A stretch of DNA of 64,000 nt. It comes from Takakia lepidozioides (Eukaryota > Plantae > Bryophyta). The stretch covers positions 69,254,001 through 69,318,000 of the forward strand of contig CM060732.1 of the NCBI GenBank assembly GCA_030704615.1, written 5' to 3'. Positions 3,367 through 61,245 of this stretch are shown here, one piece after another (position 1 is the first letter of the stretch; each line of letters starts with the position of its first letter). The position numbers and the translations under genes were made by a program. The notes below the pieces were generated by a model. The model saw only the letters and a program-made list of their open reading frames with translations. It did no database searches and had not been told where the DNA came from.

Positions 3367-3368
3367 AG

Positions 3369-8525: not shown

Positions 8526-9362
8526 CACACCCTACCAACAGGGAGTCGATTTGTCCATTTTGTAGAAACGAACATCCTAGTTGTGGCGTCCCACATCAAG
8601 GAGTTTGTTTCCGCACCATGGCGTCCCATGGCAAAGAACCAAACCCCACACTTGACTCTACTCTCCACTAGCTAGTTCGACCGACTTTCTCCAAGTCCCG
8701 GCCAAGGGTGGAGCCTCTCAAGCTCCTCCGAGTGCACTCTTCTTGGCCCACTTCACGGCCAAGGAACGATCCTCCCCGAGGATCGAATCGCCTTACTGCA
8801 ACAACATTGCTTGCGACCACTCATGATGCCATTTTTGGCATCACCTTGAGCAAAGGTTCACCTTGAACCCTTTTTTACTAGGAAGATAACCTTGAACCAA
8901 CCGTGCGCCCCAATCACTACAATTGGGTCCGCCTTGGAATGATGGCCTAAGGTACGGGAACATGCTGAAACCGCACTACGACTTCGTCCCGAGACTACAC
9001 GATTATAATACGTGAACGGAAGCACATAGCTTCCGCGTTAGCCCGCACTACAAGGCAAACCCCTCGGTAGCGCAGTTATAATACGCGCACGCGCCAGGTG
9101 CGCACTAGCACGTGAACTCCCAAAGAAGGCGCAAGTTTCCTTGCCCCTTGGATGGGAGTCACCCGATTTCAGCACTGCGCAAACACACGATTAATCCAAT
9201 TTACCTCTCCCACTTTTGTAAGCTAGCATGCATTCTACACACTAGCCAACCATACCATGCATCACCATTCCAAACAAAATAAGAGGCGCAACATTTGGAA
9301 ACCATTGCATTTATAACAAAATTTGTACAACACAAGTTTTTGCAATCGGATTCCTGAGCTAG

Positions 9363-14309: not shown

Positions 14310-14364
14310 GATGAGGCCAATCCCAAGGACGATCGCGTATTGAACTCTAAGCTCTGATATCAAG

Positions 14365-15087
14365 TGTCGCACACCTCACTTCGGTAAGCTCCCCTTCAAG
14401 TCATAGTTACTCGCTTTGATGCGCGCGCCTAACTCCCAACCTGGCCGCCGGGCCAACTCGGAGCTTCGGCTGCTCACCGGGACATAACGGTCCCCCTTTA
14501 CTCTTCCAAGGAACCCTCCACCAATTTGGGCCTAGTGGAAATTCCCTTTGGTAGATGGCAGTCCGGAATAGCTCCCTACTCCTTGGTCGCTTTCCGCCTC
14601 GCTCGCTTACTCATTAGTTTTTTGTCACCAACGACCTTGTACCGTTCTCGGGGTTACTACTCCCTATATATACTTCTGTGACTGTCCGCGGGGGTTTCAC
14701 AAACAAACATACCATTTTATGGCGAACCACCACGAAGATCCTCGGTGATGAGTCGCGGTGAGTCTTGGCCCACCCACCACGGCCCTATTGGACTGTGGTG
14801 AGTCCCAAGACTCCCCACGACTCCCACCACAAGGTCTCCGCCCCATGGTGAGTCCTATGCCACCCCCACTAAGTCCCACTAAGCTACCACCACCCCTTGT
14901 GGAGCCACCCCCACCGCAACCCGGTGTGCAGGGCTCCACCTAGTGAGTGCCTCGCTCCACCTCTTTGAGTGCCTTGGGCACTCAAGGGTGCTTCAGCCCC
15001 CCTGTACCTATTGCTGCCACCGCCCCCACCACAGGGGTAGCCCCTCTGCGTCCCGACCCCCTGCCCTCAAGGCAAAGGGCCGCGACA
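14365..15087 (-). repeat. 5' LTR of gypsy copy 2 (723 bp)
   Basis: TGTCGC...GCGACA termini adjacent to the PBS. Confidence 0.95.
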
Positions 15088-17749: not shown

Positions 17750-18160
17750 CATGCGACCGTCAGCAAAGGTTGGTCGGACAAATTTTTATTTTTTTTAAAA
17801 TAGGTGCGACCACCAGAAGGGGGCACATTTTCTTATTTTTTAAATGGGTGCGACCACAGCAGGTGGTGGTCATTTTCATTTTTTCTTATAGGTGCGACCA
17901 CAAGAGAGGGTGGTCGCACATTTTTTTTTAAAAAAAAATTGGGTGCGACCACCAGCAGGTGGTGGTCGCAATTTTTTCATTTTTTTTAAATAGGTACGAC
18001 CACCAGCAGGTGGTGGTCGCAACTTTTTCATTTTTTTAAAATAGGTGCGACCACCAGCAGGGGATGGTTGCACATTTTTAATTATTTTTTAAATGGGTGC
18101 GACCACGAACCGGTGGTGGTCGCAGACTTTTTCTATTTTGTTATTAGATGCGACCGCTCC
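17750..18160. repeat. array of palindromic GCGACCACC-(n)-GGTGGTCGC units with A/T spacers
   Basis: Repeated TGCGACCACCAGCAGG..GGTGGTCGCA units at roughly 55-60 bp spacing. Confidence 0.9.
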
Positions 18161-20008: not shown

Positions 20009-20169
20009 ACCTCTGACTGTACATCATGTTTGAATAAATGTTGTTTTCAATTGTGTTTGTCTCGTACCATAATGTTTTAATGGTTTGTTACTTGGCCATG
20101 GCACCTGGGTCCATCATATGGGGATAATCAAGCACCACACCCACGAATCTTGAAAAGTGACAGTGTACA

Positions 20170-21390
20170 CCGGGTCAATGGGTGAACCAATCGTTCCCCT
20201 GCCAAATGATTTTAGATTGATTTGAAACTTTGGGAGTGTGTTGTACATGCCCTCTTTAAGTTACCGGACAAGTATGAGGTCAATCTAAAATGGTTCTAAG
20301 GGTGAACCAATAGTTCCCCTATTAAATGATTCATGATTGAAAATTGGTTGAAAGGTTTAACGAGTCGTTCGGGGGCAAATGATTATTTCTTCGCTTGCAA
20401 CTTTGTGTACGTGATTTGTACGTACTTAAGCACATATGGACCAAAGTTGAACTTCAACAAAGTTGTTTGAATCGGTTATTCAAATTCATAAGGAGAAACA
20501 ACCTTTCGCCTGCACATGAATTGTTTTTAATTCCATTCTGAAGCCATATGCTTGATAACAACATGAAGAGTTGCATGCAAAATATCACCATGAACAGACA
20601 TCGTCTGCATCCAAAACAAAGTTATCTTCAACTTCATGCACTCTTCATAGAGAGTTCTGCAATAGTGAGCATAGAGCAAAGGATGAACGTTTTTTTCCAA
20701 ACATTTTTCTTTGGTACATTTTTTGGCAAGATGTGGTGGTGTGAGGGTTCAACTCACAGAACAAAATCAAGCCAAAAACAAAATCATTGCGCCACATACT
20801 CATTGCGCCCCACAATCCTATGCCCTCTAAATTTAGTAAAAATCCAGTTCAATTCAAAATTGGATGAAAGGGTGAACGGAAACTTCCCCGATGAAATGAT
20901 ATTTTATTGCTCCGAAACTTTGCAAGTGTCTTCTACATGCCCTCTTACACGTCTTTGAGAAGTATGACATCAATCTAAAATGGTTTAAAGGGTGAACCAA
21001 TCGTCCCCCTACCAAATGATTTTAAATTGATTTGAAACTTTGCAAGTGTCTTGTACATGCCCTCTTACAGGTCTTTCACAAGTTTCAAATCAATCTAAAA
21101 TGGTTGAAAGGGTGAATCAATCATGAACATATCAAATGATTTTGGAGTGCTTTAAAGCTTTGCAAGTGTCTTTCACATGCCATTTTAAAGGTACCGGACA
21201 AGTATGAGGTTAGTAAAATATGGTTGAAAGGGTGAACCAATTGTTCCCCTATCAAATGATTTTACATTGCTTTGAAGCTTTGCAAGTGTCAGCCACATGC
21301 CCTCCTACAAGTACCGGACAAGTATGACGTGAATAAAAAATGGTTGAAAGGGTGAACCAATCATTCCGCTATCAAATGATTTTATATTGG
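20170..21390. repeat. about 120-bp tandem repeat (GGGTGAACCAAT...CAAATGATTT...GCAAGTGTC)
   Basis: Clear 120-bp periodicity at 20870-21390, with more diverged copies from 20170. Confidence 0.85.
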
Positions 21391-21459
21391 ATTGTGTCAT
21401 TGCTTTGGTAATTCTAGCCCCCCAATGGCCCATTGTAACCCTTGAATTACAATTCAAAA

Positions 21460-21755
21460 TGCAATTCAAGCCCTTAAATTGGTAATGTCAGTCCCTAAAA
21501 TGACCAACCCGGCCCCCCTCAAATTGTAATTTGAGCCCTCCAATTCCAACCCCTCAAATTGCAATTGAAGCCCCTGAAATTTAATTCCAACCCTCAAACT
21601 TGCCCCTGAATGCCCTCAAATTGCAACTGTAGCCTGTGAAATTGGCAATTGAAGCCCCTGGAATGGCAGTTTCAGCCCCTCAAATTGCAAGTCCAGCCCC
21701 TGAAATTGGCAATTCAAGCCCCATAAATGGCAATTTCAGCCCCTGAAATTGGCTA
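21460..21755. repeat. about 22-bp minisatellite (GCCCCTGAAATTGGCAATT-like)
   Basis: Repeated CCCT(C/G)AAATTG motif. Confidence 0.75.
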
Positions 21756-21879
21756 TGGGTGAACCAATCATTCCCCTGCCAAATGATTTGGATTCATTTG
21801 AAACTTTGCGAGTGTCTTGTACATGCATCTTAAAGTTACTGGACAAGTATATGTCAATGTTAAATGGTTCAAAGGGTGA

Positions 21880-23520
21880 ACCAACGTTCCGTCATCTCAA
21901 AGCGAACAAAAATCATTTGGATGGGCAACCATCCATCGGCCCATTGAACAATTTCGGTTGATCTCATATTACTCTGGGGCCTCTTCCATGGTACACCCAT
22001 GGGCCTCCCAACACGAAAGCGAACCAAAATCATCTCGATGGCCAACCATTTGTTGAGCCATCGAATGAATTTCGATTGATCTGATATTAGTCTGGGACCT
22101 GTGAGAGGGTGTCTCAAACGTACTGGCAAAGTTTGGAAGCAAACAAGTTTTTCATTCCGTTTTTGAATGGGGCGTGTAATGTAGCCATATGCAATGTGCG
22201 TGCCAAATTTGGGAGCGAACATAATTCATTTGGACCCAAAACCACAGTTTCTTTCCCTGTTTTGCACTCCAAACTTGATTTGTGTTCAACTTTATACACA
22301 CTTCATAGAGAGTTCTGCATAGTGAGCGAAGAGAACACTTTTTTTTGGGGGGCATTTTTGATTGGTCCAAATTTTGGCGGGGGAGTAGTGGTGGAATGCT
22401 GGAAGCCGCAGAACAAAATTGAGCTCAAAACAAAATCGATACGTGCCAAAAAACCCCCAATGAAAGGCAGTGCAAACCTATTTATTGGCTTAAAATTAAT
22501 TTAAATTCAATTACATTATGGAATGGCTTGGTGTCGATGGGGAGGAAAATGATTTATTCGTCTGTTGTGTCTCCGCACATGTATTGCACACATGTTCAAC
22601 ATGCGGGCAAAAGGGGGGGCTTCAACCACATCCGTTCAATGGGTGCAATAGCCGTGCACGCATTGCAGGATTTTTTTTCGCAATGAACAAAAACCAGATG
22701 ACAACTGAACGCCTCATTGGCCCATCGAACAATTTCGATTGATCTCATATTACACTGGGACCTATCAGAGGTACATTGAACACACTGGCCAAGTCTCAAA
22801 GCGAACGAAAATCATTTGGATGGGCAACCATTCGTTGGCCCATTGAACGAATTTCGATTGATCTCATATTACTCTGGGGCCTCTTCCATGGCACATTGAA
22901 CATTTGGCCAACTCTCAAAGCAAACCAAAATCATCTCGATGGCCAACCATCTTTCAACCGCATCCGTTTAATGAGGGCAATAACCGTGCACGCATTGCAT
23001 GATTTCTTTTTCGCAATGAACAAAAACTAGATCACAATTGAACGCCTCATTGGCCCATCAAATGAATTTCGATTGATCTCATATTACACTGGGACCTATC
23101 AGAGAGTACATTGAACACACTGGCCAAGTCTTAAAGCGAACAAAAATCATTTGGATGGGCAATCATCCGTTGCCCCATTGAACAAATTTCGATTGATCTC
23201 ATATTACTCTGGGGCCTCTTCCATGGCACATTGGACATACTGGCCAACTCTCAAAGCGAACCAAAATCATCTCGATGGCCAACCAACCGTTGAGCCATCA
23301 AATGAATTTCGATTGATCTGATATTAGTCCGGGACCTGTGAGAGGGTGTCTCGAACGTACTGGCAAAGTTTGGAAGCAAACAAAAATGATTTGGATGGGC
23401 AACCATCTGAATGAATTTCGATTGATCTGATATTAGTCTGGGACCTGTGAGAGGGTGTCTCAAACGTACTAGCAAAATTTGGAAGCAAACAAAAATGATT
23501 TGGATGGGAAACCATCCGTT
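21880..23520. repeat. second about 120-bp tandem repeat family (AATTTCGATTGATCTCATATTA...)
   Basis: Multiple copies, interleaved with an about 460-bp duplication (22150-22610 resembles 23600-24050). Confidence 0.85.
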
Positions 23521-23961
23521 CACCCGTTGAATTTATTCCGCTGGATCAGCTATTGCTTTGGGACCTGTTGGACTGTGTTTCGCGTGCTCACGATTTTTTG
23601 TTTTCATTCCGTTTTTGAATGGGGCATGTAATGTAGCCATATGCAACGTGCGTGCCAAATTTGGGTGTGAACATAATTCATTTGGACCCAAAACCACAGT
23701 TTCTTCCCTATTTTGCACTCCAAACTTGATCTGTGTTCAACTTCATGCACTCTTCATAGAGAGTTCTGCAACAGTGAGCAAAGAGAACATTTTTTTTGGG
23801 GGGCATTTTTGATTGGTCCAAATTTTGGCGGGGGAGTAGTGGTGGGATGCTGGAAGCCGCAGAACAAAATTGAGCCAAAAACAAAATCGATACGTGCCAG
23901 AAACCCCCCAATGAAAGGCAGTGCAAACTTATTTATTGGCTTAAAATTAATTTAAATTCAA

Positions 23962-25294
23962 TTACATTATGGAATGGCTTGGTGTCGATGGGGATGCAAA
24001 TGATTTATTCGTCTGTTGTGTCTCCGCACATGTGTCGCACACATGCGGGCAAAATAGGGAGATGTTATCTACGTTTCGATTCGACAAACGTGTTGCACGT
24101 TGGAGGGAGGACAACGCTTCTTCTATCCGTGTTTCCTGCGATGCTAGATGGCCCGCCCATGTCACCCAATTCCGCCAATTCCCCTTCAACCATGGCCACG
24201 ATTGGATTTGCATGGCATTTGAGTACCGATATGCAACAGCCCTAGCTTGCTCGCGTCCCCCCACAAGCTGCTCTAATTCTTGTTCTTGGGCCGATGTAAT
24301 TTGCACGGCTGAACATTCCCCAGTTTTCACTATGGGGTCCTTCCCTTTTCTTGCCCTCTCCGCCGCAAGTCTTTCTTCCTCAACCCTCGCCGGGTCCAGT
24401 TCAGACGTTTGCACTTCATTCCCATGCCCGATTGAGTGAACCCCGTCGATGACGCGGTCAATGTCCATTGGTGGCATATTCAAATGCGCCAATATGTCTT
24501 GCTCGTTGGTGATTGGCCTCGGGTCCTGAAGCACACCGCGTACGCTGTCGAGAGTCTCCAACCCCATTCTTTCTAGCAACTTCGCTATTTGCCACCGTTG
24601 CAAATGAACAATGTCCTGCAGGTCTTTGATGTGCTGTTCATATGCGGCCAACTGTTCCTCCAACGGAGAGCGTACCTTGCCCTCCTCCACCTCAGACGTT
24701 GAAGGCCCGACTGCGGAGACCTGTTGCGAATCTGGAGGTTGGTCTGCAATTCCTCCTTCTTCCACCTCGTCGTTTCCATCGCACCGTATAATGTCCTGCC
24801 CTTGACGTATATACAAATCTGGGATATCAGAGAACATGTATAGTCTAGTACGCTGTCTCGCAGTGGCAGTTTGCTAATCCACCGGTCGCAATAAAATCAA
24901 CTTTGTGTACAACATGGCCGCAAATAAATACGGGCCCTTGTTGTTGTTGCGAGCGATTGACCCCACAATGTTGTATGTACTTCCTCTGCCCTGTGGCGGA
25001 AATGCGGGTTGGCGCAGGTTTGCAAGCTAGCTTGATTTTGTTTGGTTTGTGGATCATGCCTATCTCTGGGCCACAAACGATTTATGTGACACCAGTCCAC
25101 AAATTTCCTAGTCACCAACCACCCACCGCTGCCCCAACTTCCAAACTTTCCCAACCTGGTTCCGCAAGAATGTTGGGGTCATTGTATATGTCCCAACGAA
25201 GTTCGCGTCTGGCCCCTTTTGGTTTTTTTTTGGGAGGTCCAGGTTCATTATCGTCATCCCTGGGATGACCTCCTCTGTCTTCCTCCTCCGCCAT
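23962..25294 (-). pseudogene. hAT cargo ORF2, unknown protein (basic NLS-like N-terminus, Cys/His-rich segment, coiled coil, C-terminal CxHxCxxC)
   Basis: Contiguous ORF pieces 25112-25294, 24845-25057 and 23962-24837. TATAAGG upstream on the minus strand at about 25655. Confidence 0.6.
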
Positions 25295-25719
25295 TTATGG
25301 CTCTGGCTTACCCCTACTCGACAGATGTTTGCTAAGAAAAATGCTCTCCCAACACTCCTAAATCGTACCTAATCCTACCCCTAATGAATCCTCCCCAAGT
25401 ACTAGAGGCACGTGTCACTTCCTCGGCAGTTCTAAGTGGTATGACGCAATGTGCAATGAAAAAAACATGGGTACTAGAGGAGGCTTCCCCGGGAGGTACT
25501 CAGCATCGATTTCGTAGAATCCAACGGCCCAAAATACCCCCCACCCAACCAATAGCACCCCTCTCCACTTGGACTCAATGACAAGGAATGCAACATCCCA
25601 TTGCCCACCAAGTCTTGGTGTGAAGAAAAGTGAGGGAGAGAATGGCCTCCAAGGCCTTATAAGCCCCCCCTCCACACTCGGGGCGTGCGCTGTCATTATG
25701 ACTGCGCACGCTAGTAATA

Positions 25720-26420
25720 GCTGCGACCGCCAGCAGGGGTGGCCGCATCTTTTTTTCTTTTCTTTATTATGTACGACCACCAGCAGGGGGGTGGTCGCAG
25801 ATTTATTTTATTTTTAATAGGTGCGACCACCAGTAGGGAGGTGGTCGCATAATTTTATTTATTTTTTAATAGGCGCGACCACCAGCAGAGGGGTGGTCGC
25901 AGAAATTTTGTTTAAAACAAATAGGTGCGACCACCACCTGCTGGTGGTCGCACTATTTTCCTTTTCTTTAATAGATGCGACCACCAGCATAGGGGTGGGC
26001 GTAGGGGGGTGGTCGCATAATTTTTCGATTTTTTAATATCTACCAACAAGTGCACTGAGTGCGACCCGGACGATTCTGGGGTCAAATCTTGCTACTTGAT
26101 GGGTGTGGTATGGTTCGTGTGTGGTGCCCCATTCCTACGCCTCTTGGCGCATAAATGAAAGAGTTATTTTCTCTTCTCACTACTAAGGGGCCTGATTTGT
26201 GAGCTGTCGTTCCCAGGTGTTTCCAAAAAATAAAAATAAAAAATAAAAAAAATAAAAAATATTGCGACCACCAGCAGGGGTAATCAGTAAATCAGTAAAT
26301 ATGTGCGACTACCAGCAGGGGGGTGGTCGCAACATTTTTCTTTTTTTTTAACAGTTGCGACGACCGCTACTGGTGGTCACACAATTGTTTTTTTAAAAAT
26401 AGGTGCGACCACCAGGAGGT
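25720..26420. repeat. internal GCGACCACC palindromic arrays
   Basis: Same unit as 17750-18160, in clusters at 25720-26030 and 26260-26420. Confidence 0.9.
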
Positions 26421-26893
26421 TGGTCCCCTTGCACCTATATGTATATTTGGAGAGGTAGATGAAAAGCACATGTATCGACTCCCCATGGATTTATGAAGGG
26501 TAAGATGAATGTTGGGAGCTACACCTGGCCTTTGTGGCTTTCGAAACCATAATAGGAAATTAACAATGTAAAGGTAATGACGAAACACAAACACACGCAC
26601 ACCACCAAACCCTTTCTTGGGTACACATATTCCACCATTTTTATTCCGTACACGTATGCATGTACCCAAACTGAAACATGGATATCCATGGAAACATACT
26701 ACACATCATGTGACAGAAGTTATAGCTGTACCTAATTCCGTCTGGCACGACGACGATGGTATGATCTCACGCCTACTACAAAATCTTCGTCCCCACTCAC
26801 TTCACCCCCGTTCCCATGATCAATGCTAGAATCATGATCTCCATCTGTTTTTTCGTTTCGAGAGGCAACTGGCCGTTGGACCTGTAGTCGTCC

Positions 26894-29682
26894 TCAGAGT
26901 ACGTTCAGTTGTCTCTCTGGTCGATTTCCACTCCTATCATGAATACCATCTAGGGTATCAAGCCTGTTCACAGGTCGGTCACCAACAAAAGGTTGCACAA
27001 TTCTCTGTCGTTTCTGGGCTTGTCCCGGATTTCGTGGTGACCTTGGAGCATGTCTCGTATGATGAAGGCTACTCGCACGTACATCAGAGAGGCCGACATG
27101 AGAGGAAGGGGCATGAGATGGACCAGTGAGGGTCGAGGGAGCATGGTTCACATACGGACGTCGTCGGGCCAGATGAAACGACAATGGTCGGTCGTCGTCA
27201 TCCGATGGTTCGACTTGCAGAAGTCCCGCAGCAGAAGAAGCATCTCCCAGGATCGGAGTAGTGATGGAAGGAATTACATGAGGGGGAGAGAGACTAGATG
27301 GACCAGCATGGGATGGACCGGCTTGAGAAAGAGAAACATGAGATAGAGCGGGGTGAGATGAAGCACGGTTCACAGGGGCACGATGTCGGTGAAGGAATGA
27401 CAACGGCCGGTTGTCATCATCCGACGATTCGACCTGCACATCTCCCACAGTCCGTGGAACTCGTGGTGGGATAGAGTTGACCTCAACTTCATTGTTGAGA
27501 GTGTGCTCAACTGGGGGAAGGGGGTCCGCAATTGGGATGACACCATGTCGCAGTTCATCAACAACAAGGTCATCGAAGGATGGATGCATTGCAGCATCAT
27601 CGTCATTAAATTCATATGGGTCATGTGGAGGATTGCCCACATCATCGGACCTATCTCAACCGTCGGAGTCGGAGTCCCTCGCGGCGTCAGTGTCATCATT
27701 GCTGTTAGATTGGACCTCTGAGGCAGATTCTTCAGACAACAGATTCTTCTCGCACCATGCAGATACGTCACTTGCTATCCTCTCTCGCAGTAGCCTACAA
27801 TTCGTGTAGACATAAACCAATTTGTCAGCCCTGGCAGGATTCAACCTGTTGTGAATCTTGTTGTGAACAAACGAGTAACTGCTCCAGTTCCGCTCACAAG
27901 ACGAGGCAGAGCACACTTGAGCAAGAATACGCTTTGCAATGGGAGCTAACATTCTTGCTCCAGCTCCAATCAGATCCCACCTTTCATGTGGCAACATGTT
28001 CATTGCTTTTGGATCCGACATGTCATGGAAAGGATTCTGGCGATCCGAGAAGCACTGGTACTCGGACAACGCTCACTCTATCATGTTCAAGGGCGCGAGT
28101 TGCATGATGACCCGTACAAGCCCGGCTTTGGCATCCACATCGTCTCTCAAATCCATATTGTCCAACAAGAATGGATTCAGCAAGGCCCCCGCATAATGCA
28201 AGTCTGTGCAAACCATCCGTTTGCGGTCGTGAAATGCATCCTCGGTCCTTGCCGCCAAATCATCGTCCATAGAAAATGGATGACGCCTCAAGGATTGCAC
28301 GTGCTTCTCAAGGTTTTCCAATATCAACCATGCTTTACCCATTATTGGTTGTTTTCCATCAAACTCCCGCAAAGCAATCAACACCGGCTCCACCATGTAC
28401 ACAAAATTTGCACATTTCGCCCAGAAATCGTCGGAGCGAATGATTGCGCGGACCCTCCAACTTTTGCTCAAAGACTTGGACTTACGAGAGTCGCGTAAAG
28501 TGCCCACATACGCATCCCATTGAGGGTCAATGATCACCTGCTCCAGACCCGCCCTCACAGTCACCAGTCGATTCACCATCAAAAAGTTTGTGGCAAAGCG
28601 GTTTTCACCCGGGTTCCTAAGGCTGTATTTGGGTTCATGCTTTCTAAACAATGCCAGAGGGATGTGATGTGTATGAACGTCACAACCGACTTTGCCTTTT
28701 ACTAGTTGTTTCATCCATTATTTTCCAATCCTCCAAAAGGAGATCAAAGATATGAGCAGCACACCCTTGGTAATATAGATGGGGATATCGTACCATCAAA
28801 ATATTGGTCATATTAACCATGTTAGATGCATTGTCCGTGCACACTTGGACAATTTTATCAGCTCCAATTTTATCGATGAAACTCGTCAACAACCCTGCTT
28901 GATAACGTGCATCTTTTATCTCCCCGCTTGTGTCAACGGATCCCAAAAATTGTTCCCCCGCAGGACAGACCAGCATGACATTGAACAGTGGTTGATTAGT
29001 AACAGAACTCCAACCGTCCGCATATATAGTGCTTCCATATTTTCAGAGAGAATCACATGTCTTTTCATTCATCTTTTGGGTGAGGTCAGACATAGCATCT
29101 TCTAGCAATCATGTGCGGAGATCGCGATAACTCGGAGGTGTGTATGTGGACTTGGAATCGGACGTGGCTTTGACAGCAGCCACAAACGCAGGAAGCCTCG
29201 AGACATTGAACGGAATATTGGCCTCGTAGAAAAATTGGGTCCACTTCTTATCCAGAGTCCTCCTGTGCGACAAATTTAAGCCGTCTTGCATTGATTGTTG
29301 CCTCAATGGTCTGGTCCGTACAAGTGCTGGCGTACAATCGGGTGTTGCTCCTGACCCACCGGCTTCTCCAGGAACAGCAGACGCCTCGCAAGAATCCCCC
29401 TGGGTACAACTCTGAGGGACAGTTTGATTCGAACCTTGGAGTGTTTGGCTCAGAAGCCGCGGCCACATCAAGAGATGGTGAGATATTGCCTCCACATTGG
29501 GCAAAGTGGGCTTTCACTCGTATGGAGGCTTTTGGGCACAAACTAACCCCTGCATTCTTCCCATCTCTGTAGCCGAGGTGATATAATATGCGACCCGCCA
29601 GCTTCAATGCACAAAGATTGCATTGAACACCGTCCTTTTTGTGCGGGTCTATGGTGAATCAAGGGATCCACTCCTCCCTCAT
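26894..29682 (-). pseudogene. hAT transposase (BED finger, DUF659-type RNase H core, dimerization domain, disordered tail)
   Basis: QCNLC...HLG...C BED finger, FFYEANIPFN, VQVCTDNASN, CAAHIFDLLLED, ENRFAT and SASSCERNWSSY...NRL. Confidence 0.93.
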
Positions 29683-30049: not shown

Positions 30050-30630
30050 ATGTTATTTTTTTTTTAAAAACTGCTGCGACCACCCTCATGCTGGTGGTCG
30101 CACCTATTAAAAAAACAGAAAATTTCTGCGACCACCCCCCTGCTGGTGGTCGCACCTATTAAACAAATAGAAAATTTCTGCGACCACCCCCGTACTGGTG
30201 GTCGCACCTATTAGAAGAAAGAAAAATGCTGCGACCACCCCCATGCTCGTGTCACAGAGAATATATATATATATATTTAAAAATAAAAAAAATCTGCGAC
30301 CACCCCTCGGTTGGTGGTCGCACCTATTAAAAAAACAGAAAAATGCTGCGATCACCCCCATGCTGGTGGTCGCAGATATTACAAAATAGAAAAATGTTGC
30401 AACCACACCCCTGATGGTGGTCGCACCTATTACAAATAAAATAAAAATTGTGCGACCACCAGTAGCGGTGGTCGCAACTGTTTAAGGAAAGAAAAAAATG
30501 CGACCACCCTGTTGGTGGTCGCATCTATTTTTAAAAAACGAAAAATGCTGCGACAACCCATGTGCTGGTGGTTGCAACTATTAAAAAATAAGATAAATTT
30601 GCGACCACACCACCATTTGGAGGTCGCAAC
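30050..30630. repeat. subterminal GCGACCACC palindromic array
   Basis: About ten units upstream of the transposase TATA box (minus-strand TATATAAGG at about 29995). Confidence 0.9.
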
Positions 30631-30860
30631 AATTTCACAACAATGATTTAAAAATGACCTCAACTATTGGCAGATGGAGTAATTTATAAAACAATTCAGT
30701 CACTTGCCAAGGTGTCGCTTAGAATACAACGTGTCCATCTACGTGACATATTTTTCACCTAACTCATGTTTTACTGATTTTTCGGCAAAAACTGACGTGA
30801 CGTTGGTCGCGTCAGCGTTAGGTCCGACGTGACGTGACGTCACTGACGTGTGCAACCCTG

Positions 30861-31800
30861 CCCCAAGGCACTCAAGTCTTCCAAGTTGTCTGGAATTGTA
30901 CTACTCAGTAGATTATATGAGAGATCCAAAGACTCTAATTCGCTGATGTTGCGCATGCTCCTTGGGATGGGGCATGTGAAGACATGTAGAGGAGCTCACT
31001 TGGCTGTCCAATGTCTGCTGGAATCTCACCAGTCAACTTATTTGCTCAGACGTCGAAAGAAGTTGTGGTCAATAAGACATATTCGATTGTCCTTGTCATG
31101 CCCTTGAGAGTGATTTCGAGGTCTTGAGCATAGAGAGTGAAAGTACCATTCGATCCTAGGTTTATTCCCGTGGATGCATTTGCCTTCACATTGAAGCCCT
31201 TCAACTGATCAAACGTTTTCGGGAGCCCACCTGTGAAGAAGTAGTGTGAGAGATCCAACACCTGCAATCGAGTCAGATTCCAGACCCAATCTAGAATTGG
31301 ACCACTAAGTGTGTTGTGTCCAAAACTGAGCACCCGTAATTCCTGAAAATCGCCACTCTTGAAAACTGAGATAGTCCCATTGAACTTGTTTCTACTCAAG
31401 TCAATCAACACAAGATGGGTACATTTAGCCAAGGAAATTGGAACTTGTCATGTCAATTGGTTGTTGTTCACCGATAGTGTCTCAAGAGAGTCACCAATTT
31501 TTGCCAAATCTAATGTGAATTCTCCTGTGATCAAGTTTTTACCAAGTAATATCCTCCGCAAACCCGAACAGTTCTCAAGCTCAATGGGTATGCTCCCACT
31601 TAGGTGATTGTTGCCCAACTGTAGCTCCAACAAGGATGCACGATTTCCCAAACTACTGGGAATGGTGCCTGTAAACTTGTTCTTCCATAGGTAAAGTTTC
31701 GTTAGGTTTTGCAGTCAACTGAATGTTTTCCAAGGCTAACTCCACCAGAGAGGAACAATTTCCCAAACTAGAAGGAATGGTGCCTATGAGTTTGTTGGCT
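30861..31800 (-). pseudogene. LRR receptor-like protein, middle part (LRRs and island domain), 5' end missing
   Basis: LxxLxLxxNxLxGxIP repeats (NKLIGTIPSSLG, NHLSGSIPIEL, LQVLDLSH) and island ITLKGMTRTIEYVLLTTTSFDV. Joins 17207-17511 across the TSD. Confidence 0.9.
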
Positions 31801-32866
31801 TTGTCCCTTCAGGGCAGAGACTTTGCATCATGTTGAAGTCAATGGAGAAAATACGGTCAACTGACCTTACACGTGTCAACTGTTATTGGTTTACACTCTA
31901 TGTAACATGTGATGAACTATGTTTACACCATGTCAAGATTTTCATTGGTCTAAATGATCAACTAACTTTCCACTGTGTAATGACTGGGATTGGCCTAAGA
32001 AAATCTTAAATTTAAATTATTTTGTAAACATGCCGAAATCCCTATTAATTTGAAAGTTTGTACAAGTATGAGCTAATTTTATGTTATGTTTATTGTGCTT
32101 TTGTTATTAACTCATGCAAAATCTTCAAAGTATTCAGTTATATTATCAATTACAATTGTTGATAAACTAATAAAAATTATACATACTACTTTATCTAATA
32201 TATAAAACACACACACACATATAGATATATATAAGTAAATTAAAAACAAAAAACTGGTTCGGAAAATGCAGATGCATGTACAGCCCCGTCCTCAAAGGTT
32301 TGAGCCCACGCCCACGACCAAGCTTGTAACCACTTAGACTCGATAAGTCTTATGGTCGCATCCCTAGATGCGTCGACAACATACCTGGCAGGAAGCCACA
32401 GAGGGCTTTCTTGAAAACCGCAGTGGAAATCAACTATGGTCACATACAAGTACACGATCCCATATATTTTCATCGTTCCCTTCATGTTCGGAAACTGCTA
32501 GAGAATCTCGGAAAACAAAGTCAACTAAGCAATGGACTGAAAGATGACATAGAAAATAGCACCAATGAAGGAAGGAGCCATGCACTTTTAGGCCCATTAG
32601 TACATAATGCTTTGGGTGTGATAATTTCAGGAACTTCACACCGAACTCTATAACAAAAGATCATGGCCCCTAGTATACTGTTCACATTTCCACAGTACAA
32701 AACATGGAATATATATTGAATTATGCTTGCACGGCTTAGGGTGTCACATTGCCAAAAATGAAGAGGATTATATGTTCAAAAAATAATGTAACAGTGTAGT
32801 AACACATAATATATCTTTAAAAAATATGTAACTGTCAAATAATATACAACTCTATATACACAAATA

Positions 32867-34878
32867 CTATCTTACTTTCTCTTCATCTAACTCATCTCCA
32901 TATGTATACCACCAAGGCTCATTTGGAGATACATCTTTTAATGCAACCTTAGTATTAACCATATTCAAAGTCTTAGATATAGTATGTTTTTTGTTTACTA
33001 ACGCAATACCTAATTTAAAATTTGCTTCATCTACATCTTTACTTGCGAGTGTGCCGTAGCTGCATTTGTAGTCTTGAACTTATAGAACAGTTGGTTTACA
33101 AAAAAATCGTCTTCCGTGGGTGACCCTTGTTTTGCCCAATAGATAATAGTACTGTCTTTGTCTGATTTGTCCACGTGGGTCGGCACCACAATCGACCTTG
33201 TCATATGGAATTGATGCACTGGAACTTTCGACTCTTTCAATCCTATTTTAATGTAGCTGAAAGGTCGTATTTGGTCCTCAAATAAGTCCACCACAAATCT
33301 AGGGAATTTATTTACAACTCCTTTCCAAATATGTGAAGCAATACTATCACCAGTATCCCTAAACGCTACTTCGTCTTCTACAAATGTTGATTTGCTGCAA
33401 TATTTGTCTGTATTTCCCTTGCTGGCAATGGTTGCTGCATCATATCCATGGCTTTTGGATGGCCCTGGTCCTCTCATAGTATCATGTCCACTCCTTCCCT
33501 TGTATGGTGCAGTTTGAAAACACAAATAAGCTAGACTCCTAATAGTCTGGGCTTGCATTGTATCCACCACATTTCACATGTAGATAAGATAAATGTCATC
33601 TACATTGAGATTGTCAAAATCCGCAATCAGGTGGTCTTCCTCCAATACGCCCTTCCCGTTGAAGACCACAATTGGGGTTGTCGTCTTTGCGTTGTATTTT
33701 GTGTACCAGCCCAAATATCCACCATATCTTCATGTAACCAATATGGCTTGATCCTCACTTTAGAATTGTTCGGAACATCACTATAAACTAAATGAATTTC
33801 AATATCATCAGGTAAGCCTAATTTTCGCAACAGACTTTTCCCAGTGAAAGATCCATTGCCAATTCTACATTTGGCTACAACATAGTTTGCATCTTTTGAT
33901 TGTCTTTGTGCTATTTTGACAAAGTTTACTACGTCAATAAACTGCTCAATAGAATAGATAACTACGTTATCAACTATTGTACATTACAACCAAGTTCTTA
34001 TATAGGGCTTTAAATCTATAGGCCATGGTGGATGTGTACATATCGGACAGCTTTGTTGCCCAACAGATTCAAAACATTCTACACATAACTTATGGCACTT
34101 CACTTGCCACAGCTCCTTCCGATCTAAAGGAACATTTGCATGTTCGGAATTTGACTCAAACATTGTAGCAATAGTAGTGTTCATCAAGGACTTCTCACAA
34201 GGAATAACATGTAAGATATAGTGTTCTTCGATATCCGTGTACAGGATTAGAACACGGATCTTCATACTGAAGGATAATGGTTCGAAGCTCACTGGAGTAC
34301 CTTCCACTCAACAATTGCACGGTTGATCGTTTTCGTTTTCCCAAAACTTCGTGCTTATCCACATTTGCTTCAACAAGATCCATTGTCTCATTCATCTCCT
34401 CTCAAAATGGCCACCGCACGCCAACGGTGGTTCCTTGCTTCACGGCAAACACTACACTCAGAACTGTGTGTGACAGATGTAAGACCTGAACTCATTCTAT
34501 TAACATCATAATGTTCAAGTGTCCACTCAGTTCCAAAATGATCTGAAAAACATATGGACAACATTTCTTAATACAGAGTCTTCATGTAGTCAACTTTAAA
34601 TCCTACCATCTTTATATAGCTATTATTTTTAGTTACATATCCCATTTACGTTCAACACTATCCTGAACCACGTGCATCACATACATACAACCTATTTTAA
34701 ATGATATCTTTATGATGTTGAACATGCATTCGTTATATTTAATGCTATATTTTATTTTAATTTTTGATAAATACTTTAAATGGTTTACTACTTGTTTATG
34801 TGATTTTTCAAAAGTCGGTTTGGATACCAAAAATAATTTTGCTTTATCATGAAAAGAAATATTAGGATTTTCAGTCAT
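32867..34878 (-). pseudogene. RING-finger + TET/JBP-like 2OG-Fe(II) oxygenase
   Basis: RING: TCYS/CEK...KCHKLCVECF...SCPIC. Oxygenase: VPTHVDKSDKDSTIIYW...FFVNQLFYKF, then after a frameshift (H>Y)GT...KLGIALV, matching the HxD...HGT...R/K pattern. Confidence 0.62.
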
Positions 34879-34959
34879 AATGTTAATTAAAATACTATCT
34901 TCATTTTTTCAACTAAATCTTTTTGGTTTCGTAGCGGTGTTGTAAGTGTTCTGCACAAA

Positions 34960-35985
34960 ATTATCGAAAAATGCCTGTATACCTTGGGATAGAGTTGTGG
35001 ACTTCGTCCATGGAGAGGAGAGTGTGGAGGACTGCCCCACTCAATATTGGGTACATGTGCACAGTAAAGTGGACGCCGGAGTGCGGAAAGCTCCCAGAGG
35101 GAACACCTTCTTGAGCAGTATCATGTGTGCACCATCCTCATTGTGGTTTAGGGATCTCACTGCATTGTTGTTGTGATTTGTATTTGTCTCCGACTGTGGC
35201 TTCCATAAGTCCATAGGTTGATATTTTGGCTTTGAATTCCATTTGATAGGTATCAATGTTGCTGCGGACCCGACGACAAGCGCACGGTCAATGCAACTGT
35301 CGAAGATCCAAAACAAAAGCGTGGAGGTCCGGATGTGGGTGCTGGCACTAAACACCCGCATAAAGGCCCAAGAAGGAAGAAGTCAGACTACGGAGAGTCG
35401 TACAAGCGCGGGTGCCTTTGTTGTTTCAAAGTGCAGCAATCTTATCTTGCCCCGGACATTTGTGTCCTCACATACTACAACAACATGGAGAACGTCGATG
35501 CCCTAGGGAAACCCTCCCATGGCAAGACCGCAGAGTTCAAGAACACATGGGCAGCCTATGCACCCCGCATTAGCCAGGAATTGAAAGCATGGGTCGTTGA
35601 GTGTTTGTGTCGAGGCCTCACGGTCGCACGAATCATGATGGAACACAAGGAGCATGTCATGAACAACACATGTTTGGGAGATGCATAGACACGTGATGAT
35701 TTCCTCCTCGAGCAAGATGTCCGCAACCTGGCTGAGAAACGGGCGTGGCAGACGTTCAAAAAGCATGCCAACGATGCCGACAGCGTCCACATGTGGAAAG
35801 ACCTGAACCCCGCATCAGTCTTCTTCTATCGAGAAGAAACATTGGCGCAAACCTTCAAGCATTACGATGGAGATTTGACATTCACTATTGGCATTCAAAC
35901 TGAGTGGCAGAAGCAGATAATGCTTCAATTGGGACATCCGCGTATCGTTGCATGCGATGCAACCTTCGGGACAAATCACCACAAG
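34960..35985 (+). pseudogene. Mutator (MULE) transposase N-terminal half, At1g60560-like SWIM-finger family
   Basis: IPWDRVVDFVHGEE..DCPTQY, SYKRGCLCCF, AAYAPRISQEL, RDDFLLEQDVRN and FTIGIQTEWQ...ACDATFGTNHHK, ending at a GT donor. The remainder is absent. Confidence 0.8.
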
Positions 35986-36049
35986 GTACGATTCATCCCT
36001 CTTACCATTTCTGCAAATCAATCGTTCGTAGGATGTTGCACATAGAGCG

Positions 36050-36171
36050 ACGCGTCGCGGCGACCGTGACCAACGTAGGAGCCGCCAGGGGGGTGAGGCG
36101 GGGGGGGGAGGGCCACGTAGGCAGCCCCGCTGATGGCGCATTAAACTCCAGGGCCTCTTCTATTACTTGCC
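36050..36171 (-). repeat. Mutator-like TIR (GGCAAGTAATAGAAGAGGCCC... on minus), displaced/inverted end
   Basis: 36105-36171 is identical to 61179-61245. The outer flank GAAGACAAT is the reverse complement of ATTGTCTTC, which flanks the other end. Confidence 0.85.
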
Positions 36172-44559: not shown

Positions 44560-47500
44560 CTACCCATGTGTTGTATCCCGCTGCAAAAGAGTATCGACCT
44601 CGTTGAAACTCATAGTGGCCTGGTGAATGAAGTTGTCACGTTTGGGATCGCAAACCATCCTCCTCAAAAATATCAAATACAAATGTTTGCAGGGTATGAA
44701 TTTACCTCTCTTGCCCAAACTGGTTGATAGCATATTCACAAAATCAGGACATGTGCAATTGGGGAAATTGGAAACCGTGATGTCGTAGGTCCTGTCATGA
44801 ACAGCAGATGTGGAAGTGATGATTGTGAATACCCGACCATATCCTGGATCGGGTACTTCCGTGGTGCTTCCAACACGAGCTTGGAGCATTCTTGCGGACT
44901 CCACTTTGCCAAAGTGTTCAGCGGTTGGAGGGAAACGCCGAACGAGCTTTCCATCTCGTTTGGTTGGCCACAAGTCAGGATTTGCCAGGGGGACCCGGGA
45001 GGACGCAGAAGTAGTAGCACATGCATGGAGTTGGGGTTGTCTCGCAAGGGAAAAACCTGCCTCCTCCAGCATTTCAATCTCCTGAAAGCTGAGATGTGTT
45101 CCCACCTTCACGGGCCAAACGGTTGGAGGAGATGGCTTCATCACTACGGAAGGACGCACAGTTCCATGCACACATCTGGCACAATCATCTGCGCAGAACC
45201 AGAACTTGTGGTTCTTGGGTTCTGGTTGACCATATGGACGCATCAAGCCCGTGAAAGTCGGAGAAGGAATTCGGGCACCACCTCTGGATATAGATGAAGT
45301 GCACTTCTCGAAATTAGTTGCCCTGATCGTTGTACATTTCACACGAGACCCTACACTTGTGCGTTCTATGTGCCAAACGTGGTCGGGGCATGCGGACTCA
45401 AGCACATCAAGGGGGTTGTTTCTCTCCTGCACCATTTCATTGGCACTGTTTGATGCTGGAGCTTGCCGTCGTGTTGGAGGTTCCTCCACAATGGAGGTTC
45501 CGGACATGGAGCTGTCATGCATGGGAACACGAGGCTTCGAGAAGTTATCACGGTCTGCCCTGTGGGAATCTGAATCCGAACCAGGTGGAGTGTTCAATTT
45601 CCTCTTACAGGAGCCGAATCTCTCCTCCCCTTCAAGATGTGGAACTCTAGAAACAAGTGGCGTTCCCTGGGCATACATGCTCACCGCCCGTGCTATCTTG
45701 ATTGGATCCCCAGATCTGTTTGCAGCACGCAACATCAACTCCCATTTGTCCGGACCCTTGCCACCAACCCCACCTCGTAAGAAATCACGATATCGGGTTT
45801 GTTGTTGCAAGGCACGTATCAAATCATCTGTTGTTGCCACATACAAATCCCGACCTCGTTTCCCAGACTGTTGCAACCATGCGTTGTGCACAGTTTCTGC
45901 CAAATTGCAAGATGGCATGTCCGCCATTTCCTCAATGGACATGTTCTGCAAAGAGGATAACCACACTTCAGAAGAGTGCACAGGAAACAACATAAAGAAA
46001 GCAATGAGTCAAAAATATGGAAAGCAAATGTATGAATAAAGCATGAAATAGAAGCCTCGTACCATTGTCATGGCTGCTCCCCACTGTCTATACCGGAAGT
46101 GCCAAAACGCCAGCCAATCTTCCAATGCTCTCATACTCTCAAGTGATGCAGCTCCAGAAGAGAACCACCAGGCACGAATTGTCTGGAACAAAGTGTCCGC
46201 CTCTTCATTGTTCTAGCATCTTTGTACTCTTTGCACAATTTACGGTGCTGAGTCTGCATCTCTGGTTTGATGTCCGACTTTGTATGTTTTTCCAGAGATT
46301 GTGTCCAATGGAATAGACATGTACGCTCTCTTCCTGACATAGGCACTTTTGGGTCGCCCGATCCGAAGACAATACGAACAGCATTGAAATTTGCTTGAGC
46401 ACTATCCGCCATAAAACCTGCGAAATTTGGAGATGGCAGCCCATGGCAGCCCATGACACGTATCAGGGAATTCCACATGAGCTTCTGGGATTCCGTATCC
46501 TCGGATTGCATGTCACAAACTGCAATTGTCATAACTCGTTGGTACACTGGATCGTAGACATGACAAGCCATTGTCGTCCAATCCTTCACTCGTTTCACAT
46601 GATCAAACATAAGAAAACAGTTCTGCAAGTCCCCAGTCTTCTGCATCCGCTTCACGAGGCTAACCCCACTGCCCTCCCCAACAGTCGACATTTTGAAAAG
46701 AAAAACTTTGATGGCACCTTGACCTGGGAATACATTGTCCTGGATGTAATCGTACTTGCTCACTCGTTTCAATTCCAAAATATTGTCTATGTAGCCTCTG
46801 ATCCCAGAGCCCATTCTCAATGCATTGATCTGATGCCGAATGTTAGGTGAACTTAAAGTGGAGAAATGATCCATGACCAGGTCCAATGCTGCACCGTCAA
46901 GTTTAGTCCCCACAGAATCCCCTTCACTCAAAATATGGCTTTCCAAGAAGGACTTGCTTGCGCCAAGAGCAATTGCAGATGTTGTTGCGGATGGGTTTCT
47001 CCCGAACTCCTGTTTAATCAACCTCGATACTGTCTCACTCTCCCTGTAATCCCCTTTCGAGACAGGATGGTTATGGAATCCGAAATGCACACAAGCTCTT
47101 GTCATTGTTTTCAAACGGTGGACAACATAGTACATTCTTGCTCCGCAGAGCGCCAAGCAGGATGGCACAAGTTTGCAGAATTTGCAGACGAAAGTGTTTG
47201 CCGGTGGAGGGGCAGTCCCAGCTGAAATGGATTTTCCGCCAGACCCTCCCATTCGCTTTGATTATGAACCCCAGACTGAAGAAAGTGTCTGCAATTCAAA
47301 TTATCACACCTAAGGTGTCCATTGCAAACTGTCCTCCTGAAAACAAGCTTGTCATCATTCTGAATATTGGATGTTTTTGTTCTGCACCACGGGTGCCCGT
47401 CGTGTTTCTTGTCCATTCCATGCATCATGATTGTTACACCTCCAACTCGCGGAGGAAGGCAGCTCGAATAGGATATCGCCATCAAAAGTCTCCGGCAAGA

Positions 47501-54519: not shown

Positions 54520-55530
54520 GTGCTAAACCCTCTTTGGGAGCCATACTCAATTTCTCAATAACATCAAAGTTACAGTAATAACTTTTTCAGGCTGTCTTTC
54601 AGGAAAGGCAGCGGTGGATCTTCAGGAGATACAGTCATTTCTGGCGAGTCTGTTTTCGACAGCCCCCTTTCCAATTTTCTGCTTCCTGTTTATGCCGAAG
54701 CAATGGCACTTCACGTGGCCGAGTCCCTATCCCCTGACTTTTTAGTGGCCAGCCGTAGGTGTATCCAGCGTGGATCCGGTGTTCTAAAATACTTAGACTT
54801 AGATGCAGAGGAAGCGGGGATACATTGTACTGACTCTGAGTCAGACTGAACTGTATTCTTTTAATATTCATTTTCATACTATCTGGAAAACGTTGAATCC
54901 CCTTCCTCCACCGTAGTTGTTCCTTTAGAACAAATAATAATCACAGAATCAACTTTCATTTAAATTGCAATATGTATGAATCCATCTCACAAACCTCCCT
55001 GACTCTTCTCATATCCATTGTGCATTCATCTACAGTGTATTCATGCGTGCTCCATTCATGAATTTTTTCCTTTATTCAACATCCATTGTACATTCATCCT
55101 CTGTACTCTTTAATCCACCCCACAAACCTTCCACACTCATTTCATATACGTTGTGCATTCGTCAAAAGTTTTGGTCATGCATCTTCCTGTCATGAATTTT
55201 TGTCATTGCTCAACATCCATTATACATTCATCCATTTTACTCTTATCCATCCCTCATTCATCCATCTACATTCATTTTTCACACTCACCCATATGTTTAT
55301 CATCCAACATTCATCCATCCTTTATTCAATGCCTTTTATTATGTCGTCCAGCTTGTTTCCGCGGTAAAGGGTGCCAATCCGCGGGAATACACTCCACTTC
55401 TTTCTGGGCGCGTGGTGACGCGGCCTTCACGTGTGATGACGTGGAGTGAGCCTCGTGACGTGGCATTTGCGCAAGGTGACGTGGCGTGAGCGCAGTTGCG
55501 CTCACGCGCTCACGTGACCAGGCTCACGCC

Positions 55531-58088: not shown

Positions 58089-58340
58089 GTCATATGTGTC
58101 TTCTGCTTGGTCGTGTTCTTTTAAAGTTGCCTTTGCAAGTATGTATCTTCTGGCAGTCTACTGGCTTCTTGTCTGCAGTCTTGTGAGGCCTCTACTCGGT
58201 CTGCTGTGACTGTGCCCCACAGTTGTGCTTGTCGACTTTGTTGAATGTCAGGTCTATTGTTTGGTCTGCTGTGACAATGCAGTCCACTGTCCGAATGTCC
58301 ACTATCCACTATCCAATTGTCGGGTCTGTTGGTCGGTCTG

Positions 58341-61124: not shown

Positions 61125-61245
61125 CGGCGACTGCGGGCCGTGGCGTTGCCGCCAGAGGTGGGGGGGGGGGGGGGGGGAGGGGAGGGCCACGTAGGCAGCC
61201 CCGCTGATGGCGCATTAAACTCCAGGGCCTCTTCTATTACTTGCC
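61125..61245 (-). repeat. Mutator-like TIR, right end of outer element, followed by 9-bp TSD ATTGTCTTC
   Basis: 67-bp identity with 36105-36171, plus partial similarity further inward. Confidence 0.85.

What the first reader, a model, noticed from the sequence alone, without database searches (positions are those of the whole stretch)
32867..36171. TET/JBP-like oxygenase fused to a RING finger, head-to-head with a Mutator transposase
Seen: a minus-strand gene with RING cysteines and a C-terminal PTHVDKSD..TIIYW..F..QLFYKF..(H>Y)GT..KLGIAL pattern, divergent from an At1g60560-type MULE transposase fragment. Known: HxD...H...R is the 2OG-Fe(II) signature. TET/JBP enzymes oxidise 5mC or T, ride on KDZ-type transposons in basidiomycetes, and are not part of the standard land-plant toolkit. 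Inference: a moss MULE carrying a putative 5mC-modifying enzyme could erase or mask its own silencing marks. This copy is decayed.
Basis: partly seen in the sequence, partly recalled or inferred. Interest (0 to 1): 0.85.

Follow-up and report, generated by a model that had tools for sequence, protein, structure and literature searches.

The report
Decayed CMD1-like TET gene in plant
This is a broken copy of a gene for an enzyme family that chemically alters methylated DNA, a family not yet described in land plants, and its intact relatives resemble the vitamin-C-using algal enzyme CMD1 and lie among several kinds of jumping genes.

Summary
The oxygenase is real and belongs to the TET/JBP family. 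The minus-strand gene (34395 to 32867) is colinear with an intact 556-aa homolog (E 1e-35). The family profile hits only Chlamydomonas CMD1 in the PDB (E 7e-6), and language-model features point to Tet_JBP (0.95).

Homologs keep H-x-D...H (distal His 22/22) and CMD1's Trp358 (26/28), which blocks 2-oxoglutarate. The 2OG-binding Arg column varies.

This copy is dead: 3 frameshifts, 2 stops, a 31-nt deletion and Tyr at the distal His. The N-terminal Cys module is a family trait but only half a canonical RING.

A Mutator-type transposase fragment does lie head-to-head. No TIR pair or TSD encloses both genes, and none of 23 homolog loci has a similar MULE. Homologs instead lie beside CACTA, Harbinger and rva_4 transposases or between inverted repeat arrays. 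Transposon cargo is likely; cargo of this MULE is unproven. The host was not identified. The scan noted at least seven other copies in this genome, one reportedly intact.

The parts
32867..34395 (-). Pseudogene of a Zn-finger + TET/JBP (CMD1-related) dioxygenase, about 520 codons, intronless as judged by colinearity with P0026
34038..34251 (-). N-terminal Cys/His module (C-x3-H, P-C, C-H-K-x-C-x2-C, C-x2-C). RING-like in its second half only. Found upstream of the catalytic domain in at least five homolog loci. Frameshift near 34225
33984..33986 (-). In-frame premature stop (TAA)
33705..33730 (-). Second frameshift (approximate position)
33574..33576 (-). In-frame premature stop (TGA)
33064..33570 (-). 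Catalytic domain, first part: R-G...S-H-G-Y segment; His 33177 and Asp 33171 (Fe ligands, = CMD1 H345/D347); Asp 33162 (= D350); Trp 33138 (= W358); Phe (= F371). The family G-G-x-F motif reads E-D-D-F here
33059..33063 (-). Deletion break: 5 nt where all ten homologs checked have 12 codons (31 nt missing; frameshift)
32870..33058 (-). Catalytic domain, last part: distal His position reads Tyr (TAC), then G-T, then K-L-G-I-A-L-V-N-K
34396..34945 (.). AT-rich (30% GC) divergent spacer with a TATA-like box on the minus strand at 34610-34619, about 220 nt upstream of the TET start (inferred promoter)
34946..35986 (+). 5' fragment of a Mutator-type (ZSWIM/At1g60560-like) transposase. Frame breaks or introns, stop at 35686-35688. 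Ends just after the first catalytic Asp motif (D-A-T-F-G) at a canonical splice donor; the rest of the DDE domain was not found
   Evidence: (PF21056, E 0.015); At1g60560 likeness recalled from memory, not tested
36040..36171 (.). GC-rich terminal piece shared with 61122-61245 (82% over 124 nt; 95% over the last 84 nt), both ending at the same base. Probable end of a transposon; no inverted partner or TSD found in the window

Best explanation
This is a dead copy of a multi-copy gene family of non-seed land plants: an N-terminal Cys/His zinc-binding module fused to a TET/JBP Fe(II) oxygenase whose closest solved relative is Chlamydomonas CMD1. The family probably spreads as passenger cargo of DNA transposons of several superfamilies. 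Most likely mechanism of intact members: the DSBH core binds Fe(II) through H-x-D...H (motif shown), flips a cytosine into the pocket and reads it with the Asp equivalent to CMD1 D350 (residue shown, role inferred), and attacks the 5-methyl group of 5mC. The pocket keeps CMD1's Trp358/Thr399/Thr337/Ile356/Phe371 set and lacks a conserved 2OG-binding Arg, so the co-substrate is more likely ascorbate (giving a 5gmC-type adduct) than 2-oxoglutarate (inferred, about 45%). The modified base would hide or remove the silencing mark on the element (inferred from fungal TET+ transposons, CMD1 and the punuivirus TET). The Zn module may serve targeting or protein binding (speculative). Component odds: TET/JBP homology about 0.93; transposon-borne family about 0.75; DNA 5mC substrate about 0.65; this copy inside the adjacent MULE about 0.4.
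For: 24 homologs, best E 2.9e-21; full-length colinearity with P0026. Family profile vs PDB sequences: CMD1 is the only significant hit, E 8e-5 and 6.7e-6. Atlas features 0.95 to Tet_JBP clusters. A low-confidence model retrieves only DSBH oxygenases in its Foldseek top 50, with CcTet first and TET2 and NgTET1 near the top. Residue table: H345 28/31, D347 28/31, D350 30/31, W358 26/28, H397 22/22, T/S399 20/21; the R410 column is T8/K5/R2/other. Roles of these residues from PMC7854593. Homolog contexts: CACTA transposase divergent (L006), Harbinger 1-1.6 kb downstream (L009, L022, L023), rva_4 (L001, L004), inverted subterminal repeat arrays on both sides of the gene (L001, L023). dN/dS mostly 0.2-0.5 between lineages and about 1.2 between the near-identical copies L001 and L004. 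CMD1 itself lies in a DNA transposon (10.1101/2022.06.16.496473).
Against: No Pfam Tet_JBP hit for any of 41 members. Both AlphaFold models are poor (pLDDT 36 and 38), one gave only noise, VIA Z is only 5-6 with AlkB-type folds tied, and the Atlas shape search found nothing related. The CMD1 sequence match covers only about 70 residues and was E 0.024 with a narrower alignment. CMD1 S335 is His here; by my inferred register S414 is Ala and the 5mC-stacking F416 is Val/Thr; R244/F245/H249 could not be mapped. No TIR/TSD-bounded element was shown at any locus. These genomes are so TE-rich that a nearby transposase is weak evidence, and L009/L022/L023 may be one locus in several haplotypes. Synonymous sites between lineages are near saturation.
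Confidence: 0.6

Rival explanations
1. Same family and transposon habit, but a conventional 2OG-dependent TET making 5hmC/5fC/5caC; the Lys/Arg in K-L-G or another basic residue binds 2OG.
For: The window copy and 7 of 19 homologs have Lys or Arg at that column. Foldseek ranks CcTet, TET2 and NgTET1 above CMD1. Most characterised TET/JBPs use 2OG.
Against: The column is Thr in a whole clade. Trp at the CMD1-358 position is 26/28, and in CMD1 this Trp occupies the space of the TET2 R1896 side chain and is proposed to exclude 2OG (PMC7854593). Foldseek ranks from a pLDDT-38 model do not separate TET subtypes.
Confidence: 0.22
2. The oxygenase acts on another base or nucleic acid (thymine, 4mC, 6mA, RNA, or a modified C), because the base-stacking aromatic of CMD1 and TET2 appears absent.
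For: F416 column is Val/Thr and S335 column is His. Fungal CcTET also oxidises 6mA (PMC12730594). Other readers noted methyltransferase-carrying elements in this genome (unchecked).
Against: The Asp equivalent to CMD1 D350, which reads cytosine N4 and disfavours T, is 30/31 conserved, and Lys sits at the R418 position (PMC7854593). The register of the last strand is my inference.
Confidence: 0.15
3. On the linkage only (not exclusive of the others): the MULE fragment is an unrelated neighbour in nested TE debris, and the TET relic came with another element or is a degenerate host paralog.
For: No inverted partner for the 36171 terminus and no TSD. No similar MULE in 23 homolog loci. The window is almost wholly TE-derived. 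Another reader reports a copy beside a Helitron (unchecked).
Against: Divergent arrangement across a 550-nt AT-rich spacer, similar state of decay in both genes, and the same head-to-head layout with a CACTA transposase in L006. Fungal TET genes move between transposon superfamilies (PMC12730594). The window copy is its own lineage, so its carrier need not match those sampled.
Confidence: 0.5
4. Not a TET/JBP but another 2OG-Fe(II) oxygenase (AlkB- or P4H-like) with a chance likeness to CMD1.
For: No Pfam Tet_JBP hit; VIA top rows are ALKBH1 and FTO, tied with TET2.
Against: Three separate methods point to TET/JBP: profile to CMD1, Atlas features with all ten best family hits agreeing, Foldseek probabilities. 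The H-x-D-x-x-D...H-G-T spacing matches CMD1 almost without gaps.
Confidence: 0.04

Closest known systems
Chlamydomonas CMD1 (PDB 7CY4; vitamin-C-dependent 5mC glyceryl transferase) and its carrier DNA-1_cRei
   Same: Only PDB sequence hit. Fe triad, D350, T337, V342, I356, W358, F371 and T399 equivalents are kept. No conserved functional 2OG Arg. Green lineage, transposon setting.
   Different: Land-plant host; N-terminal Cys/His module; S335 is His; by inferred register S414 is Ala and F416 is Val/Thr; R244/F245/H249 not mapped; similarity detectable over about 70 residues only; activity untested.
Fungal TET+ DNA transposons (PU, AG, PE types; KDZ, hAT, Harbinger, IS3EU, EnSpm, Helitron; PMC12730594)
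   Same: Many copies, mostly decayed, beside transposases of several superfamilies (CACTA, Harbinger and rva_4 here).
   Different: Plant host; MuDR/MULE is not among the 11 fungal carrier lineages listed; H-x-D rather than the PE-type H-x-E; complete TIR/TSD-bounded elements not yet shown here.
Canonical TETs (human TET2, NgTET1, CcTET)
   Same: DSBH fold class and H-x-D...H triad; acidic residue five after the first His.
   Different: No conserved 2OG-binding Arg in the last strand; Trp at the CMD1-358 position; no Pfam Tet_JBP match.
VANDAL/VANC anti-silencing MULEs of Arabidopsis
   Same: A Mutator-type element next to a candidate anti-methylation gene.
   Different: VANC is a sequence-specific DNA-binding anti-silencing factor, not an oxygenase (own knowledge; VANDAL mentioned in PMC12730594). 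MULE linkage here is unproven.

Membership tests
TET/JBP dioxygenases | H-x-D...H iron triad in a DSBH core | tested here: met
   Family: H 28/31, D 28/31, distal H 22/22; DSBH-only hits. In the window copy the distal His reads Tyr (pseudogene).
TET/JBP dioxygenases | Significant profile similarity to a characterised member | tested here: met
   CMD1 E 6.7e-6; Atlas 0.95 to Tet_JBP clusters
TET/JBP dioxygenases | Match to Pfam Tet_JBP (PF12851) | tested here: not met
   0 of 41 members. Taken as divergence, since three other methods agree.
TET/JBP dioxygenases | Confident fold match to TET structures | tested here: inconclusive
   pLDDT 36-38; Foldseek best E 6e-3; VIA Z 5-6
Canonical 2OG-dependent TET | Invariant Arg binding the 2OG C5 carboxylate (TET2 R1896) | tested here: not met
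   Column is T8/K5/R2/P/Q/I/W; register inferred from the distal His and the last strand
CMD1-type (ascorbate) enzymes | Trp358, Thr337, Thr399, Val342, Ile356, Phe371 of the vitamin C pocket | tested here: met
   W 26/28, S/T 27/31, T/S 20/21, I/L/V 28/31, I 28/30, F 22/28 (numbering from PMC7854593)
CMD1-type (ascorbate) enzymes | Ser335, Ser414, Phe416 | tested here: not met
   His, Ala and Val/Thr respectively. S335A and F416A reduce but do not abolish CMD1 activity; the 414/416 register is inferred.
CMD1-type (ascorbate) enzymes | Arg244, Phe245, His249 | tested here: inconclusive
   The family has a conserved R-G-x-Y...S-H-G in the matching region, but no residue-level alignment to CMD1 was obtainable there
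CMD1-type (ascorbate) enzymes | Makes 5gmC from 5mC-DNA and ascorbate | not testable with these tools
   needs an enzyme assay
RING finger | Eight ligands C-x2-C...C-x-H-x2-C-x2-C...C-x2-C | tested here: not met
   First C-x2-C pair absent; Pfam RING scores 14-15 bits against cut-offs of 27-35. It is a related or different Zn module.
Mutator (MULE) element carrying the gene | Mutator-type transposase | tested here: inconclusive
   5' fragment only; PF21056 E 0.015; motif likeness to At1g60560 from memory
Mutator (MULE) element carrying the gene | TIR pair enclosing both genes, with 8-10 bp TSD | tested here: not met
   one candidate terminus only. Decay could have erased the other.
Mutator (MULE) element carrying the gene | Same TET-MULE layout in independent copies | tested here: inconclusive
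   Absent in 23 loci from other genomes; the rest of this genome could not be searched

The most novel reading that the evidence does not exclude
Non-seed land plants carry a widespread, transposon-borne family of Zn-finger-fused CMD1-type enzymes that use ascorbate to put a 5gmC-like (or new) modification on methylated cytosine. This would give plant DNA transposons of several superfamilies, here a Mutator, an enzymatic anti-silencing tool, and give these plants an unreported DNA base.
Probability: 0.3. Interest if true: 0.9.

Novelty: new variant of a known kind. Interest (0 to 1): 0.62.

Why it matters
A 2024 paper states that TET homologues are unidentified in plants (PMC11233409). [quoted passage not shown] My eight literature searches that ran found no report of such genes in land plants, though the library is incomplete and the key Iyer/Aravind surveys were not held. 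The family offers a directly testable candidate source of oxidised or glyceryl-modified 5mC in plants and extends the fungal and algal 'transposon carries its own demethylase' pattern to land plants. It also explains why it was missed: no Pfam hit and mostly broken copies. This particular copy is non-functional; intact homologs such as P0026 are the useful material.

Tried and rejected
Word-index protein searches with the window ORF and with P0026 found nothing; only the exhaustive HMMER search and a profile worked. Pfam never gave Tet_JBP. Atlas features on the broken ORF were blank. Viral contigs held no relatives; the metagenome scan gave two short contigs. The divergent homolog P0036 did not reach CMD1 alone. 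TIR, TSD and repeat-array searches around the window locus were negative. In the dN/dS table the L003 rows were out of frame and are ignored. Three Iyer/Aravind papers and one further id were not held.

So expression, host identity and a stronger test of the MULE fragment are missing. I built and searched no spliced model of the transposase. The broken TET gene was joined only with X at the breaks, in local alignments. I took no contig for human.

Rejected: chance ORF (colinear homologs exclude it); canonical RING E3 fusion (ligand pattern incomplete); an intron at 33059-33063 (only 5 nt remain where 36 are expected).

Full report
OBSERVATION. Six-frame translation and codon-level reading confirm a minus-strand gene from Met 34395 to a stop at 32869-32867. 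An exhaustive HMMER search with the 179-aa ORF found 24 homologs, best E 2.9e-21. One cluster holds a full-length, uninterrupted 556-aa protein, P0026, which aligns to the window in three colinear segments (E 1e-35). Against it the window copy shows frameshifts near 34225, 33710 and 33060, and stops at 33986-33984 and 33576-33574. Only 5 nt remain where ten homologs have 12 codons before the distal His, a 31-nt loss. The distal His position reads TAC (Tyr); this may be a C-to-T change or the deletion junction. The family's G-G-x-F motif reads E-D-D-F, consistent with two G-to-A changes. The copy is a pseudogene.

WHAT THE PROTEIN IS. Pfam recognises none of 41 family members, which explains why the family is unannotated. 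Three other methods point to TET/JBP. (1) Profiles of the family hit one PDB sequence only, Chlamydomonas CMD1 (E 8.3e-5; 6.7e-6; 0.024 with a narrower alignment). (2) Language-model features of P0026 residues 300-545 score 0.95 to Tet_JBP clusters, with all ten best family hits agreeing. (3) A low-confidence model of homolog P0056 (pLDDT 38) retrieves only double-stranded beta-helix oxygenases in the Foldseek top 50, led by CcTet, with TET2 and NgTET1 among the highest probabilities. VIA Z-scores are only 5-6 and do not separate TET from AlkB, so the structural evidence supports the fold class and no more.

ACTIVE SITE. The HMMER alignment fixes the CMD1 numbering from I334 to T399 (offset 374 in the MBP fusion; H345, D347, F371 and H397 all fall in place). 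Across homologs: H345 28/31, D347 28/31, D350 30/31, I356 28/30, W358 26/28, F371 22/28, H397 22/22, T/S399 20/21, T/S337 27/31. The CMD1 structure paper (PMC7854593) shows that T337, W358 and T399 are essential for the vitamin C reaction, that W358 occupies the space of the 2OG-binding Arg of TET2 and NgTET1, and that D350 reads the cytosine amino group. The column that would hold that Arg is Thr in 8, Lys in 5 and Arg in 2 homologs. Against a simple CMD1 identity: S335 is His, and by my inferred register of the last strand S414 is Ala and the 5mC-stacking F416 is Val or Thr, while R418 is Lys. R244/F245/H249 could not be aligned. Ascorbate chemistry is therefore a hypothesis at about 45%.

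N-TERMINUS. A motif C-H-K/R-x-C-x2-C followed by Cys pairs, preceded by C-x3-H and P-C, lies upstream of the catalytic domain in the window and in L001, L002, L003, L009 and L010. It is a family trait. It lacks the first C-x2-C of a canonical RING and scores below Pfam cut-offs, so 'RING-like Zn module' is the defensible name.

THE NEIGHBOUR. A plus-strand transposase fragment starts about 550 nt from the TET start, across a 30%-GC spacer with a TATA-like box facing the TET gene. It carries a stop at 35686-35688 and ends after the D-A-T-F-G motif at a splice donor (35986). Pfam gives a weak ZSWIM1-3 RNaseH-like hit (E 0.015); the At1g60560 likeness agrees with my memory of that protein but was not tested. 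Just beyond, 36040-36171 matches 61122-61245 and both end at the same base, as a transposon end would. I found no inverted partner, TSD or flanking repeat arrays for it. That one element holds both genes is therefore not shown.

CONTEXT ELSEWHERE. In 23 loci around homologs, none resembles this MULE. Several are short or are the same place from different samples. Two long contigs carry plant-type genes (an ABP1-like exon; a GH5 mannanase closest to the two best-scoring solved mannanases). Their neighbours are a divergent CACTA transposase (L006), a convergent Harbinger transposase (L009, L022, L023), rva_4 integrase-like genes (L001, L004), DUF7869 and a distant piggyBac-type gene. In L001 and L023 the TET gene is bracketed by inverted arrays of short repeats (L001 6807-7890 and 14734-14866; L023 about 8070-8325 and 11445-11780), the subterminal layout of many DNA transposons. 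L009, L022 and L023 share more than 10 kb at 92-96% and may be one locus in several haplotypes, so they count once. dN/dS is mostly 0.2-0.5 between lineages (synonymous sites near saturation) and about 1.2 between two near-identical copies, the pattern expected of transposon genes. A tree shows several deep clades with different neighbouring transposases, and the window copy as its own lineage.

COMPARISON WITH WHAT IS KNOWN. TET/JBP cargo is established for 11 lineages of fungal DNA transposons, none of them MuDR (PMC12730594). CMD1 lies in the transposon DNA-1_cRei and other Chlamydomonas TETs lie in Helitrons (10.1101/2022.06.16.496473). A viral TET is implicated in keeping an endogenous giant virus unmethylated (10.64898/2026.10.09.758095). 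[quoted passage not shown] So the strategy is known; the host group, the Zn-module fusion and the CMD1-like pocket with an altered base-stacking site are new as far as I could search.

EARLIER NOTES AND LIMITS. The scan holds at least seven other notes of this family in the same genome, including a reportedly intact spliced copy also judged CMD1-like. I reached CMD1 before seeing that note and did not check it. Expression and host species are therefore unknown, and 'moss' is unverified.

VERDICT. A real, decayed member of an undescribed land-plant TET/JBP family closest to CMD1, probably transposon-borne; cargo of this particular MULE about 40%. New variant of a known kind; interest 0.62.

Noticed in passing
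window 61122-61245 and about 55500-61245: Second copy of the 36040-36171 terminus. It ends a region holding a C2H2-finger ORF (59260-60174, minus; weak Pfam) and an ORF at 58413-58871 (plus) that reads like a Ulp1/C48 protease piece by eye (no Pfam hit).
   Followed up: partly
window 17751-18155, 25714-26425, 30059-30637: Arrays of a palindromic unit of about 52 nt; the 30 kb array is inverted relative to the other two. They flank hAT-like transposase pieces (27656-29504).
   Followed up: no
window 44560-47252: A second, unrelated Mutator-like transposase with a SWIM finger on the minus strand (weak Pfam SWIM); a SWIM-like piece also at 10518-10739.
   Followed up: partly
window 31046-31900: Broken LRR receptor-like gene fragment on the minus strand, just downstream of the TET relic.
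   Followed up: partly
window 32240-32700: Short coding-looking stretch on the minus strand (81-aa ORF 32240-32485) with no Pfam hit; might be an exon of a further decayed gene.
   Followed up: partly
window 20161-24045: Tandem and inverted arrays with 120-nt and 21-nt periods.
   Followed up: no
window 509-14953: Two to three copies of a Gypsy-like LTR retroelement segment at 90-94% identity, spaced about 4.5, 6.5 and 11 kb.
   Followed up: no
window 63304-63998: Long inverted repeat arms (85 and 110 nt) at the window end.
   Followed up: no
L023:8070-11780; L001:6807-14866: TET genes bracketed by inverted subterminal repeat arrays, hairpin-forming in L023, with no recognisable transposase between the arrays; reminiscent of DNA-1_cRei. 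Exact termini and TSDs not found.
   Followed up: partly
L004 vs L001: L004 lacks L001 5627-9623, which removes the left array and the Zn-module half of the TET gene.
   Followed up: partly
L001:10828-13220 and L002:2097-4504: An unidentified 2.4-kb repeat (77% identical) lies near the TET gene in both loci, in different position and orientation.
   Followed up: partly
P0023/P0036 and P0008: Two very divergent homologs on long branches, possibly from other lineages; they keep the Fe triad and the Trp358 equivalent.
   Followed up: no
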